From Macrostomum lignano (taxonomy: Eukaryota): a stretch of 64,000 nt of DNA. The position numbers and the translations under genes are program-made. The stretch covers positions 94,254 through 158,253 of the forward strand of contig NIVC01001965.1 in NCBI GenBank assembly GCA_002269645.1, read 5' to 3'. Under the pieces are notes generated by a model that was not told the DNA's origin, did not search any database, and was given only the letters and a program-made list of their open reading frames with translations. This document shows, one piece after another, positions 23,870 through 24,418 of the stretch (its first letter is position 1; each line of letters opens with the position of its first letter).

Positions 23870-23939
23870 ATGCGTCTGCTACAGTTGGCTGCGCTAGTCG
23901 GGTCGCTAATCTCCGCGTCTGTCATCGTTGCTAGCGAAG
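23870..23939 (+). CDS. Neuropeptide precursor exon 1 (signal peptide)
   Basis: MRLLQLAALVGSLISASVIVASE, then a phase-1 donor at 23940. An upstream TTTCAG acceptor lies at 23853. Confidence 0.8.
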
Positions 23940-24098
23940 GTCTGTTGTTGACTAGGGCGCACGGGTTAAGGGGGCGACTACTGTCTACCAATTATCTATA
24001 CTTTTTCGTATCTAAAGTAATCATTTAATAATTAAACTTGATCGGTTCGAAATTTATGCAAACACAGCATAGTAAAGTACTTTTTATCCTTTCTGTAG

Positions 24099-24418
24099 CT
24101 TCATCAACAGCTCGACGGGATATCTACAACAATGATGACTTGGCCCGTTCGTTAGCAGCCTATCCATCATATTCGAAGCGCCAGCAGCGCTGGTCGAGCT
24201 CGTTCGGAAAGCGCCAGCCCCAGGTGTGGTCGAGCTCGTTCGGAAAGCGCCAGCAGCGCTGGTCGAGCTCGTTCGGAAAGCGCCAGCCCCAGGTGTGGTC
24301 GAGCTCCTTCGGTAAGCGACAGCGCCAGATGTGGTCGAGCTCCTTCGGCAAGCGACGTCAGCGATGGTCGAGCTCATTTGGAAAGCGCGACTCTGGATTT
24401 GAAGATGGCGACGAGTAA
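24099..24418 (+). CDS. Neuropeptide precursor exon 2: six amidated xWSSSFamide peptides
   Basis: TTCTGTAG acceptor in phase with exon 1. Six WSSSF-GKR units, dibasic sites and an acidic tail. AATAAA at 24549 and 24619. Confidence 0.92.

What the first reader, a model, noticed from the sequence alone, without database searches (positions are those of the whole stretch)
23870..24418. Neuropeptide precursor encoding an unassigned pGlu-xxWSSSFamide family
Seen: a 129-aa precursor with a signal peptide and six Gly-Lys-Arg-terminated copies: QQRWSSSF x2, QPQVWSSSF x2, QRQMWSSSF and (R)QRWSSSF. There is also a possible non-amidated peptide DIYNNDDLARSLAAYPSYS. A 69-bp block is duplicated. Known: GKR signals cleavage and amidation, and N-terminal Gln cyclises to pGlu. 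I cannot match the WSSSFamide ending to RFamide, luqin, kinin (FxxWGa), MIP, allatostatin A or GnRH/corazonin motifs. It may be a lineage-specific family or an extreme variant of a known one.
Basis: partly seen in the sequence, partly recalled or inferred. Interest (0 to 1): 0.75.

Follow-up and report, generated by a model that had tools for sequence, protein, structure and literature searches.

The report
Flatworm WSSSFamide neuropeptide precursor gene
This is a genuine-looking two-exon gene of the flatworm Macrostomum lignano that encodes six copies of a small amidated peptide ending in WSSSF-amide, and its nearest named relative is the little-studied molluscan "Wx3Yamide" neuropeptide family, so it is a new member of a known kind, not a wholly new one.

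Summary
ATG 23870 to stop 24418, with a 159-nt GT..AG intron removed, gives a 129-aa preproprotein. It has a hydrophobic signal peptide, an RR/KR-flanked spacer peptide and six tandem units ending WSSSF-GKR.

The window is Macrostomum lignano (Mlig_3_7, NIVC01001965.1). All six substitution events inside the six WSSSFGKR cores are synonymous (P about 8e-5 under neutrality). The exon/intron GC contrast fits the splice model.

"Unassigned family" is only partly right. A HMMER scan of 1.84 billion proteins found an uncharacterised protein with seven xGQRWSSGF-GKR units. It also found many mollusc precursors of the family published as "Wx3Yamide" (oysters 2014, scallop 2018; function and receptor unknown). 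Gastropod units (QQGWHSDY, QQRWQTMY, QQGWYGHF) share length, the QQ start, Trp at -5 and an amidated aromatic end with QQRWSSSF. The Haliotis gene also has the same two-exon, phase-1-intron layout.

When the GKR/KR sites are masked, only marginal similarity remains (about 32 bits). That is no worse than some mollusc-to-mollusc comparisons.

Verdict: a real amidated-peptide precursor (about 0.85). Homology with Wx3Yamide is plausible (about 0.45) but unproven. Expression, processing and receptor are untested.

The parts
23834..23853 (+). Polypyrimidine tract ending in AG, 16 nt upstream of the ATG. It may be the 3' splice site of a 5'-UTR intron or a spliced-leader acceptor.
   Evidence: Sequence read directly...CTATTTTCTTAACGCTTTCAG|GTAGGCGCCCAAGAAGATG. 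The function is inferred only.
23870..23939 (+). Coding exon 1. It encodes Met1 to Glu23 plus the first base of codon 24, that is, the signal peptide MRLLQLAALVGSLISASVIVASE.
   Evidence: The best 12-aa Kyte-Doolittle mean is 2.35, and small residues (A/S) at -1/-3 allow cleavage after Ser22 or Ala24. GC is 0.57.
23940..24098 (+). Phase-1 intron of 159 nt (GT...polypyrimidine...AG).
   Evidence: GC is 0.36 against 0.57-0.58 in the exons. Without splicing, the ATG-23870 frame stops at 24028 after 52 aa.
24099..24418 (+). Coding exon 2. It holds the propeptide, all six peptide copies, the acidic tail and the TAA stop.
   Evidence: GC is 0.58.
24119..24175 (+). Spacer peptide DIYNNDDLARSLAAYPSYS, flanked by RR (24113-24118) and KR (24176-24181). 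It has no Gly amide donor.
   Evidence: It shows no significant similarity to the non-repeat parts of mollusc precursors.
24182..24214 (+). Unit 1: QQRWSSSF-GKR, predicted to give pQQRWSSSF-amide.
24215..24250 (+). Unit 2: QPQVWSSSF-GKR, predicted to give pQPQVWSSSF-amide.
24251..24283 (+). Unit 3: QQRWSSSF-GKR. It is identical in DNA to unit 1.
24284..24319 (+). Unit 4: QPQVWSSSF-GKR. It differs from unit 2 by three synonymous changes.
24320..24355 (+). Unit 5: QRQMWSSSF-GKR, predicted to give pQRQMWSSSF-amide.
24356..24388 (+). Unit 6: RQRWSSSF-GKR, preceded by KR. It would give RQRWSSSF-amide, or pQRWSSSF-amide if cleavage follows KRR.
24389..24418 (+). Acidic C-terminal tail DSGFEDGDE plus the stop codon.
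24549..24624 (+). Two AATAAA polyadenylation-like hexamers (24549-24554 and 24619-24624), 131 and 201 nt after the stop codon.
   Evidence: This is a motif match only.

Best explanation
The locus is a functional two-exon preprohormone gene of Macrostomum lignano.

Proposed mechanism: exon 1 supplies a signal peptide that takes the protein into the secretory pathway. A PC2-type prohormone convertase cuts at the RR/KR sites, and a carboxypeptidase trims the basic residues. Peptidylglycine alpha-amidating monooxygenase uses each C-terminal Gly to make a C-terminal amide, and N-terminal Gln cyclises to pyroglutamate.

Predicted products: pQQRWSSSFa (x2), pQPQVWSSSFa (x2), pQRQMWSSSFa and (R)QRWSSSFa, plus a non-amidated spacer peptide. 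Shorter forms are possible through R-x-x-R sites (RQQR|W, RRQR|W, KRQR|QM): WSSSFa and pQMWSSSFa. The invariant WSSSF-amide end is the receptor-binding core, and the variable N-terminal residues modulate it. The target is most likely a still unknown GPCR.

By sequence pattern and gene layout it is the flatworm counterpart of the molluscan Wx3Yamide family ([QQ/AP]-[G/R]-W-x-x-x-Y/F-amide). There is at least one close relative, a QRWSSGFamide precursor.

Shown here: the gene structure, the motifs, the purifying selection on the core, and the best database matches. Inferred: expression, processing, amidation, neuronal site of action, the receptor, and common descent with Wx3Yamide. My confidence in the generic claim 'real amidated-peptide precursor' is about 0.85. 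The figure below is for the whole statement, including the Wx3Yamide relationship.
For: - Structure and motifs.
- Selection: the six WSSSFGKR cores differ by at least 6 substitution events, all synonymous (5 synonymous of 24 sites; P = 8e-5 if neutral). The N-terminal extensions carry amino-acid changes.
- Composition: GC is 0.57/0.58 in the exons, 0.36 in the intron and 0.40 in the 3' flank.
- Processing enzyme: a neuronal PC2 homologue essential for development exists in M. lignano (PMC4490696).
- Database scan: HMMER against 1.84 billion representatives gave 55 hits. P0005 has 7 x xGQRWSS(G/N)FGKR and is 71% identical over the repeats. About 19 hits are Wx3Yamide-type precursors, and every one that carries a source name is a mollusc (Dreissena, Batillaria, Haliotis x2, Potamilus, Littorina).
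- Named family: oysters (PMC4200219) and scallop, including QQGWHIAYamide (PMC5996578).
- Per-unit similarity: C-terminus-anchored BLOSUM62 scores of QQRWSSSF are 25 against QQGWHSDY, 29 against QQRWQTMY and 22 against QQGWYGHF (P for a random 8-mer 1e-5 to 1e-6). Scores are 3 or less against enterin, allatostatin-A, SALMFamide, kinin, SIFamide and the GnRH N-terminus.
- Gene layout: the Haliotis rubra gene also has exon 1 = signal peptide, a phase-1 intron, and all copies in exon 2.
- Masked control: M. lignano against Haliotis keeps 31.6-32.8 bits. That equals or exceeds several mollusc-to-mollusc scores.
Against: - There is no transcript, peptide or expression evidence; none could be obtained with these tools.
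- Most of the HMMER significance (E 1e-33 to 1e-18) comes from the periodic GKR/KR sites. After masking them, only P0005 (E 1.5e-4) and one Haliotis precursor (E 7e-3) stay near significance, and bivalve-type Wx3Yamide precursors drop to noise.
- There is no similarity outside the repeats.
- The C-terminal residue is Phe in all six units, whereas the family is defined by Tyr.
- No hit carrying a source name comes from a spiralian phylum other than Mollusca, so as far as the named hits show the distribution is molluscs plus Macrostomum only, which favours convergence.
- The Schmidtea and Taenia catalogues lack WSS/SSFG strings and multi-copy W-x3-Y units.
- Short multi-copy peptides are known to converge (PMC6188537).
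Confidence: 0.5

Rival explanations
1. It is a real amidated neuropeptide precursor, but of a lineage-restricted (Macrostomum or flatworm) family. The resemblance to molluscan Wx3Yamide would then be convergent: short aromatic-amide peptides with an N-terminal Gln arise repeatedly.
For: - After masking the processing sites, the similarity to mollusc precursors is marginal or absent.
- There is no similarity in the non-repeat regions.
- All six units end in F-amide with a Ser-rich core, which is not typical of the mollusc units.
- No clear members turned up from phyla lying between the two.
- Planarian and cestode catalogues lack the motif.
- Thiel et al. 2018 warn that such motifs converge.
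- The masked score is not family-specific: Dreissena Wx3Yamide against enterin keeps 59 bits.
Against: - An unbiased scan of 1.84 billion proteins put one family at the top.
- The match covers length, the QQ start, Trp at -5 and the amidated aromatic end. Natural mollusc variants carry QQRW and F-amide.
- Intron position and phase are the same as in Haliotis.
- The masked score is within the mollusc-to-mollusc range.
Confidence: 0.35
2. It is a secreted multi-copy peptide precursor that is not neuronal. It could be an exocrine, pheromone-like, antimicrobial or gland product that uses the same convertase and amidation machinery.
For: Nothing in the sequence specifies the cell type. No expression data could be obtained. 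M. lignano has many secretory gland types (general knowledge).
Against: Tandem short peptides, each ending in Gly plus a dibasic site and with an invariant C-terminal core, are the classic neuropeptide layout. The nearest relatives were found in ganglion transcriptomes and peptidomes of bivalves (PMC4200219, PMC5996578, PMC8398477).
Confidence: 0.08
3. It is not a functional gene. One of the many minisatellites of this repeat-rich window happens to be open in one frame, or it is a decaying pseudogene copy in a neopolyploid genome.
For: The window holds 69 tandem-repeat rows, and many arrays give long spurious ORFs in several frames. The antisense strand of the array is also open for 97 aa. No transcript evidence was obtained.
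Against: - Unit lengths are 33 and 36 nt, so the frame is kept.
- All 6 core substitutions are synonymous (P = 8e-5).
- A signal-peptide exon joins in frame through a canonical intron.
- The GC contrast fits exons.
- There are polyadenylation-like signals downstream.
- Related peptides are encoded by an independent protein record and by mollusc genes.
Confidence: 0.04

Closest known systems
Molluscan Wx3Yamide neuropeptide precursors (Stewart et al. 2014, oysters, PMC4200219; Zhang et al. 2018, scallop, PMC5996578; unnamed orthologues in Haliotis, Littorina, Batillaria, Dreissena, Potamilus)
   Same: - Both have a signal peptide followed by many tandem 7-9-residue units, each ending in Gly plus KR.
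- Trp lies five residues from an amidated aromatic C-terminus.
- Gastropod units start QQG/QQR, as does QQRWSSSF, and have the same 8-residue length.
- Rare F-amide variants exist (QQGWYGHF, LQAWLTTF).
- The Haliotis gene has the same layout: signal-peptide exon, phase-1 intron, and one exon with all copies.
- Receptor and function are unknown in both.
   Different: - All six flatworm units end in Phe, not Tyr.
- The x3 core is Ser-Ser-Ser.
- There is no acidic inter-unit spacer, and no counterpart of the conserved first bivalve peptide LPGW-x-VYYamide.
- Similarity is not detectable outside the units and is marginal once GKR/KR are masked.
- The phylum differs; the literature calls the family molluscan (PMC8398477).
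P0005 (UniParc UPI0007A1322A): C-terminal part of a 1305-aa chimeric gene model with 7 x [AP][GD]QRWSS(G/N)F-GKR
   Same: It shares the QRWSS-x-F-GKR units (71% identity over 70 aa), the tandem arrangement without spacers, and an acidic propeptide with a faint LAR-x-L match. It remains the best hit after masking (38-41 bits). It is very probably a paralogue, or an orthologue from a close relative.
   Different: The fourth core residue is Gly (Asn-Gly in one unit). The N-terminal extension AGQR/PDQR has no N-terminal Gln. The source organism is not given, and the gene model is fused to unrelated sequence. Its locus could not be fetched.
Nematode FSS[SA]F-amide precursors (Mesorhabditis spiculigera CAJ0571716.1 = P0047; P0030)
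   Same: These are multi-copy GKR-terminated units with an aromatic residue at -5 and the same SSSF/SSAF-amide ending, for example DPRFFSSSF-GKR.
   Different: They have Phe instead of Trp at -5, a conserved DPR[FLM] N-terminus and no Gln start. The per-unit score is 15-16, and the signal is lost after masking. They come from an ecdysozoan. The resemblance is probably convergent.
Xenacoelomorph FxxxFamide / SSxxxFamide and echinoderm SALMFamide multi-copy peptides (PMC6188537; crinoid SALMFamide precursors P0033 and P0035)
   Same: They share the same general class: short multi-copy peptides with an aromatic C-terminal amide and Ser-rich cores.
   Different: They have no Trp and different spacing. 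The crinoid hits (E about 1e-6) vanish after masking, and the per-unit score is -9.
GnRH / AKH / corazonin superfamily (pGlu-x-W/F-S... peptides)
   Same: An N-terminal pGlu and a Trp-Ser dipeptide near the N-terminus.
   Different: Those precursors carry a single peptide directly after the signal peptide, followed by an associated peptide. Here there are six tandem copies after a spacer. The C-terminus-anchored score is -8.

Membership tests
Amidated multi-copy neuropeptide/prohormone precursor (generic) | N-terminal signal peptide | tested here: met
   MRLLQLAALVGSLISASVIVAS has an n-region Arg and a roughly 19-residue hydrophobic core (12-aa Kyte-Doolittle maximum 2.35). Small residues at -1/-3 allow cleavage. 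No dedicated predictor such as SignalP was available.
Amidated multi-copy neuropeptide/prohormone precursor (generic) | Peptide copies bounded by dibasic convertase sites, with a C-terminal Gly as amide donor | tested here: met
   All 6 units are preceded by KR and followed by GKR.
Amidated multi-copy neuropeptide/prohormone precursor (generic) | Selective constraint on the peptide core relative to the rest | tested here: met
   There are 6 synonymous and 0 non-synonymous events in the WSSSFGKR cores (P = 8e-5). The amino-acid changes are confined to the N-terminal extensions.
Amidated multi-copy neuropeptide/prohormone precursor (generic) | Transcribed and spliced, expressed in neurons or endocrine cells, with processed peptides detectable | not testable with these tools
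   No M. lignano transcriptome or peptidome was reachable.
Wx3Yamide (Mollusca) | Paracopies with the pattern W-x-x-x-Y followed by Gly and a dibasic site | tested here: inconclusive
   W-x3-aromatic-GKR is present in 6 of 6 units, but the aromatic residue is always Phe. Mollusc precursors are overwhelmingly Tyr, with rare Phe units: QQGWYGHF in P0008 and LQAWLTTF in P0039.
Wx3Yamide (Mollusca) | Short (7-9 aa) units with a 3-residue N-terminal extension (QQG in gastropods, AP[GAQ] in bivalves) | tested here: met
   The QQR, RQR, QPQV and QRQM extensions give 8-9-residue units. QQRW occurs naturally in gastropod-type precursors (QQRWQTMY, P0066-P0068).
Wx3Yamide (Mollusca) | Statistically significant sequence similarity to accepted members beyond the shared processing sites | tested here: inconclusive
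   Unmasked E-values run from 1e-33 to 1e-10. With G[KR][KR] and [KR][KR] masked, only Haliotis P0007 remains (32.8 bits, E 7e-3 for the full library) and the bivalve members fall to 8-19 bits. Some accepted members score no better against each other. Per-unit P values are 1e-5 to 1e-6.
Wx3Yamide (Mollusca) | Similarity of the non-repeat precursor regions (for example the conserved first peptide LPGW-x-VYYamide of bivalves) | tested here: not met
   Shuffle-controlled local alignments of the propeptide against 19 mollusc precursors gave mostly z < 1.3. There is no LPGW-type first peptide.
Wx3Yamide (Mollusca) | Shared gene architecture | tested here: met
   In Haliotis rubra (L007), exon 1 is 91 coding nt (signal peptide), followed by a phase-1 intron, with all copies in exon 2. 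In M. lignano, exon 1 is 70 coding nt with a phase-1 intron. This is weak evidence, because the layout is common among secreted-peptide genes.
Wx3Yamide (Mollusca) | Orthologous cognate receptor | not testable with these tools
   The papers found report no biological function for Wx3Yamide and name no receptor (PMC8398477).
GnRH/AKH/corazonin | A single peptide copy immediately after the signal peptide, pGlu N-terminus, GKR, then an associated peptide | tested here: not met
   There are six tandem copies, and the first starts 27 residues or more after the predicted signal-peptide cleavage.
Kinin (FxxWG-amide) and MIP/Wamide | C-terminal Trp-Gly-amide or Trp-amide | tested here: not met
   The C-terminus is Phe-amide and Trp is at -5. 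The per-unit score against lymnokinin is -3.

The most novel reading that the evidence does not exclude
WSSSFamide/WSSGFamide peptides are the platyhelminth orthologues of molluscan Wx3Yamide. That orphan 'molluscan' family would then be an ancient spiralian neuropeptide system with a conserved [Q-Q-G/R]-W-x3-[Y/F]-amide ligand. Its receptor and function could first be worked out in the transgenic, RNAi-amenable flatworm M. lignano.
Probability: 0.45. Interest if true: 0.5.

Novelty: new member of a known kind. Interest (0 to 1): 0.4.

Why it matters
Neuropeptide repertoires of flatworms are only partly catalogued, and most flatworm families have no known relatives outside the phylum. If the link to Wx3Yamide holds, three things follow.

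- A family described as a molluscan novelty would be pushed back to the common ancestor of molluscs and flatworms.
- A ligand would be added for matching to the many orphan flatworm rhodopsin-type GPCRs.
- A tractable model with RNAi and transgenesis would become available to find the first function and receptor of this family.

If the link does not hold, it is one more lineage-specific multi-copy peptide. That is useful for annotation but unsurprising. Either way the gene is a clean, testable prediction with exact target masses.

Tried and rejected
- The search for homologous proteins returned nothing in three searches. It missed even P0005 and the window's own RCC1 protein. For these repetitive queries, and apparently for this species, it is uninformative, so I draw no conclusion from it about annotation status.
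It has no record of the exon-2 ORFs starting at ATG 24056 or TTG 24038, of the RCC1 terminal-exon ORF or of P0005. I therefore could not fetch the second genomic copy of the gene on NIVC01002913.1 (region about 99.1-99.4% identical), nor see whether the gene is annotated in GenBank.
- I tried to rebuild the 472-aa RCC1 product so as to hop along the contig. Fifteen splice combinations fit, and the recorded gene range does not begin at an ATG, so I dropped it.
- A scan of JGI metagenomes for two tandem WSS-x-FGKR units gave 0 hits.
- Literature strings WSSSF, WSSGF, SSSFamide and WSSFamide gave no relevant paper.
- The supplements of Collins 2010 lack WSS, SSFG, SSSF and QQGW, and their few YGKR sites are RYamide-type. 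The Taenia crassiceps npp catalogue lacks them too.
- McVeigh 2009 and Koziol 2016 are not held, so those catalogues were not checked.
- Pfam has no family for the flatworm or mollusc precursors; it gave only spurious repeat matches.
- tblastn of P0005 against the window found only the peptide array, so the origin of P0005 remains unknown.
- Considered and rejected as families: GnRH/AKH/corazonin, kinin, MIP/Wamide, SIFamide, NdWFamide, enterin, allatostatin A and SALMFamide.
- An unspliced model starting at ATG 24056 (MQTQHSKVLFILSVASS...) is possible. It has a shorter and weaker hydrophobic segment (Kyte-Doolittle 1.98 against 2.35) and ignores the canonical intron.
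Full report
**What is there**

Reading 23500-24800 and listing ORFs shows an ATG at 23870 whose frame stops after 52 codons unless an intron is removed. Joining 23939 to 24099 removes a 159-nt intron (GTCTGT ... CTTTTTATCCTTTCTGTAG). The result is a 390-nt CDS of 129 codons ending in TAA at 24416-24418:

MRLLQLAALVGSLISASVIVASEASSTARRDIYNNDDLARSLAAYPSYSKR-QQRWSSSFGKR-QPQVWSSSFGKR-QQRWSSSFGKR-QPQVWSSSFGKR-QRQMWSSSFGKR-RQRWSSSFGKR-DSGFEDGDE

That covers the six GKR-terminated copies, the RR/KR-flanked spacer peptide and the 69-bp duplication (TRF period 69, 2.6 copies, 90% matches).

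In the six-frame translation of the whole 64-kb window, WSSSF occurs six times in this frame and nowhere else. This is the only real open-frame cluster of G[KR][KR] sites; the few others flagged lie in low-complexity repeat tracts.

**Where it comes from**

The neighbouring intronless 1441-aa ORF (8342-12667) is recorded with an identical product on three contigs of assembly GCA_002269645.1. One of these, NIVC01001965.1, matches the window at 100% identity, so the window is NIVC01001965.1:94254-158253. NIVC00000000 / Mlig_3_7 is the Macrostomum lignano genome of Wudarski et al. 2017 (PMC5730564). The organism is a neopolyploid, which explains the near-identical extra contigs.

**Is it a gene or a lucky minisatellite?**

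The window is full of minisatellites (69 TRF rows), and many give long meaningless ORFs, so this rival had to be tested. Several observations argue against it.

- The units are 33 and 36 nt long, so the frame is kept.
- Across the six 24-nt WSSSFGKR cores there are at least six substitution events (TCG/TCC/TCA, TTC/TTT, GGA/GGT/GGC, CGC/CGA). All six are synonymous. Only 5 of the 24 sites are synonymous, so the neutral probability is 8e-5.
- Amino-acid changes are confined to the N-terminal extensions (QQR, QPQV, QRQM, RQR).
- GC content is 0.57 and 0.58 in the two exons, against 0.36 in the intron and 0.40 in the 3' flank.
- Two AATAAA hexamers follow the stop at +131 and +201 nt.
- A polypyrimidine-AG sits 16 nt before the ATG, which suggests a 5'-UTR intron or a spliced-leader acceptor. 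This last point is a motif match only.

I conclude that the array is under purifying selection at the peptide level and is part of a proper gene model. I could not test expression.

**Predicted processing (inferred from established prohormone biochemistry)**

- The signal peptide is removed after about Ser22 or Ala24.
- A PC2-type convertase cleaves at RR/KR. A neuronal, essential PC2 homologue is documented in M. lignano (PMC4490696).
- A carboxypeptidase trims the basic residues.
- The C-terminal Gly is converted to an amide.
- N-terminal Gln cyclises to pyroglutamate.

The products would be pQQRWSSSFa x2, pQPQVWSSSFa x2, pQRQMWSSSFa and RQRWSSSFa or pQRWSSSFa, plus the spacer peptide DIYNNDDLARSLAAYPSYS.

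Three units have Arg directly before Trp, with a basic residue at P4 (RQQR|W, RRQR|W). Unit 5 has KRQR|QM. Shorter products, WSSSFa and pQMWSSSFa, are therefore possible.

**Relatives**

The word-indexed protein search found nothing. It later failed to return even known positives, so that result carries no weight.

The exhaustive HMMER scan of 1.84 billion representatives, using exon 2 as query, gave 55 hits at E <= 1e-3. I read all of them. They fall into three groups.

1. P0005 (UniParc UPI0007A1322A) is a chimeric 1305-aa model whose C-terminus holds seven xGQRWSS(G/N)F-GKR units. It is 71% identical to the window's array and is clearly the closest relative. Its organism is not stated and its locus could not be fetched.
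2. About 19 precursors carry many copies of APGWGATY-GKR, APAWQAVY-GKR, QQGWHSDY-GKR, QQGWNTMY-GKR and similar units. Every one with a source name is a mollusc: Dreissena, Batillaria, two Haliotis species, Potamilus and Littorina. All are labelled uncharacterised.
3. The weaker hits are enterin, allatostatin-A-type and crinoid SALMFamide precursors, two nematode-type FSS[SA]F-amide precursors, and unrelated repeat proteins.

A literature search for one of the mollusc units led to its name. [quoted passage not shown] It was found again in scallop (SNKWSIAYamide, LRQGWNIAYamide, QQGWHIAYamide; PMC5996578). In 2021 it was still described as a molluscan peptide without known function (PMC8398477).

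**How good is the match to Wx3Yamide?**

Points in favour:

- QQRWSSSF and gastropod QQGWHSDY have the same length, the same QQ start, Trp at the same position and an amidated aromatic end.
- Natural mollusc variants include QQRWQTMY (QQRW) and QQGWYGHF and LQAWLTTF (F-amide).
- C-terminus-anchored ungapped BLOSUM62 scores are 22-29 (random 8-mer P 5e-5 to 1e-6). They are 3 or less for enterin, allatostatin A, SALMFamide, kinin, SIFamide and the GnRH N-terminus.
- The Haliotis rubra gene has the same architecture: a signal-peptide exon of 91 coding nt, a phase-1 intron, and one exon with all copies. In M. lignano exon 1 is 70 coding nt with a phase-1 intron.

Points against:

- Masking G[KR][KR] and [KR][KR] in query and targets collapses the HMMER signal. 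Only P0005 (38 bits, E 1.5e-4 at full library size) and one Haliotis precursor (32.8 bits, E 7e-3) remain.
- The bivalve-type precursors fall to noise under masking, as do enterin, allatostatin A and SALMFamide. The impressive raw E-values were therefore mostly due to the periodicity of the processing sites.
- The non-repeat regions show no similarity.
- All six flatworm units end in Phe.
- No hit carrying a source name comes from another spiralian phylum.

As a calibration, masked mollusc-to-mollusc comparisons are often no better. Littorina against Haliotis gives 10.8 bits, Potamilus against other bivalves gives 21.6 bits or less, and Haliotis against several bivalves gives 27-31 bits. Haliotis against M. 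lignano gives 31.6 bits. The flatworm sequence therefore lies inside the similarity range of the accepted family. The measure is not fully family-specific, however: Dreissena against enterin keeps 59 bits.

Thiel et al. 2018 explicitly warn that short multi-copy peptides converge (PMC6188537). I therefore rate common descent with Wx3Yamide at about 0.45.

**Prior cataloguing**

- No paper in the searchable library contains WSSSF or WSSGF in a peptide context.
- The Schmidtea prohormone supplements (Collins 2010) lack WSS, SSFG, SSSF and QQGW, and their few YGKR sites belong to RYamide-type peptides.
- A 30-gene cestode npp catalogue lacks these motifs too.
- Pfam has no model for either the flatworm or the mollusc precursors.
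- The two most relevant flatworm catalogues, McVeigh 2009 and Koziol 2016, are not held, so prior description there cannot be excluded.

**Verdict**

The interpretation as an amidated multi-copy neuropeptide precursor is well supported by sequence logic and by a selection test. It still lacks any expression or peptide evidence.

The 'unassigned family' claim needs correcting. The peptides fit a named orphan family, Wx3Yamide, as a W-x3-F-amide variant in a new phylum, and they have an uncharacterised WSSGFamide relative in the databases. This is a new member of a known kind and of moderate interest. It becomes more interesting if receptor work shows that the mollusc and flatworm peptides are truly orthologous.

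Noticed in passing
window 8342-12667 (+): An intronless 1441-aa ORF with CARD, NB-ARC, APAF1_C and WD40 domains (Apaf-1-like). The identical protein is recorded on three contigs of the M. lignano assembly (NIVC01001965.1, NIVC01002913.1, NIVC01002993.1), which fits the neopolyploid genome.
   Followed up: partly
window 15241-18495 (+): An RCC1-like gene (472-aa product on record). Its introns are largely filled by minisatellites: a 20-mer array at 15515-16044 and a 12-mer array at 16925-18004. The array lengths differ between the duplicated contigs.
   Followed up: partly
whole window, e.g. 51385-53060, 30465-31076, 34749-35518, 36676-37313: The density of minisatellites is very high: 69 TRF rows in 64 kb. 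Examples include a 22-mer repeated about 67 times at 99% identity. Many arrays create long spurious ORFs on both strands, so ORF length alone is not evidence of a gene here.
   Followed up: no
window 29157-29903 (-); 46228-46869 and 59521-60078 (+): There is a terminal exon with two PDZ domains. There is also a Ser/Thr protein-kinase domain split between exons about 13 kb apart, with repeat arrays in between.
   Followed up: no
P0034 (JGI/IMG metagenome, 1036-bp contig): A precursor from an unidentified animal encodes NPWLGGF-GKR, PPWAYSF-GKR and NLPYYLHN-GKR units. This is another W-x3-F-amide-type multi-copy peptide outside molluscs.
   Followed up: no
P0004 (Dreissena) versus P0011/P0018 (enterin-type precursors): After masking the processing sites, the bivalve Wx3Yamide precursor (APGWGATY) still scores 44-59 bits against enterin-type precursors (APGFGHSFV). 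This hints at a possible relationship between these two mollusc families, or at a shared AP-G bias.
   Followed up: no
window 23834-23853 (+): A polypyrimidine tract plus AG lies 16 nt upstream of the start codon. It could be a spliced-leader trans-splice acceptor or the end of a 5'-UTR intron.
   Followed up: no
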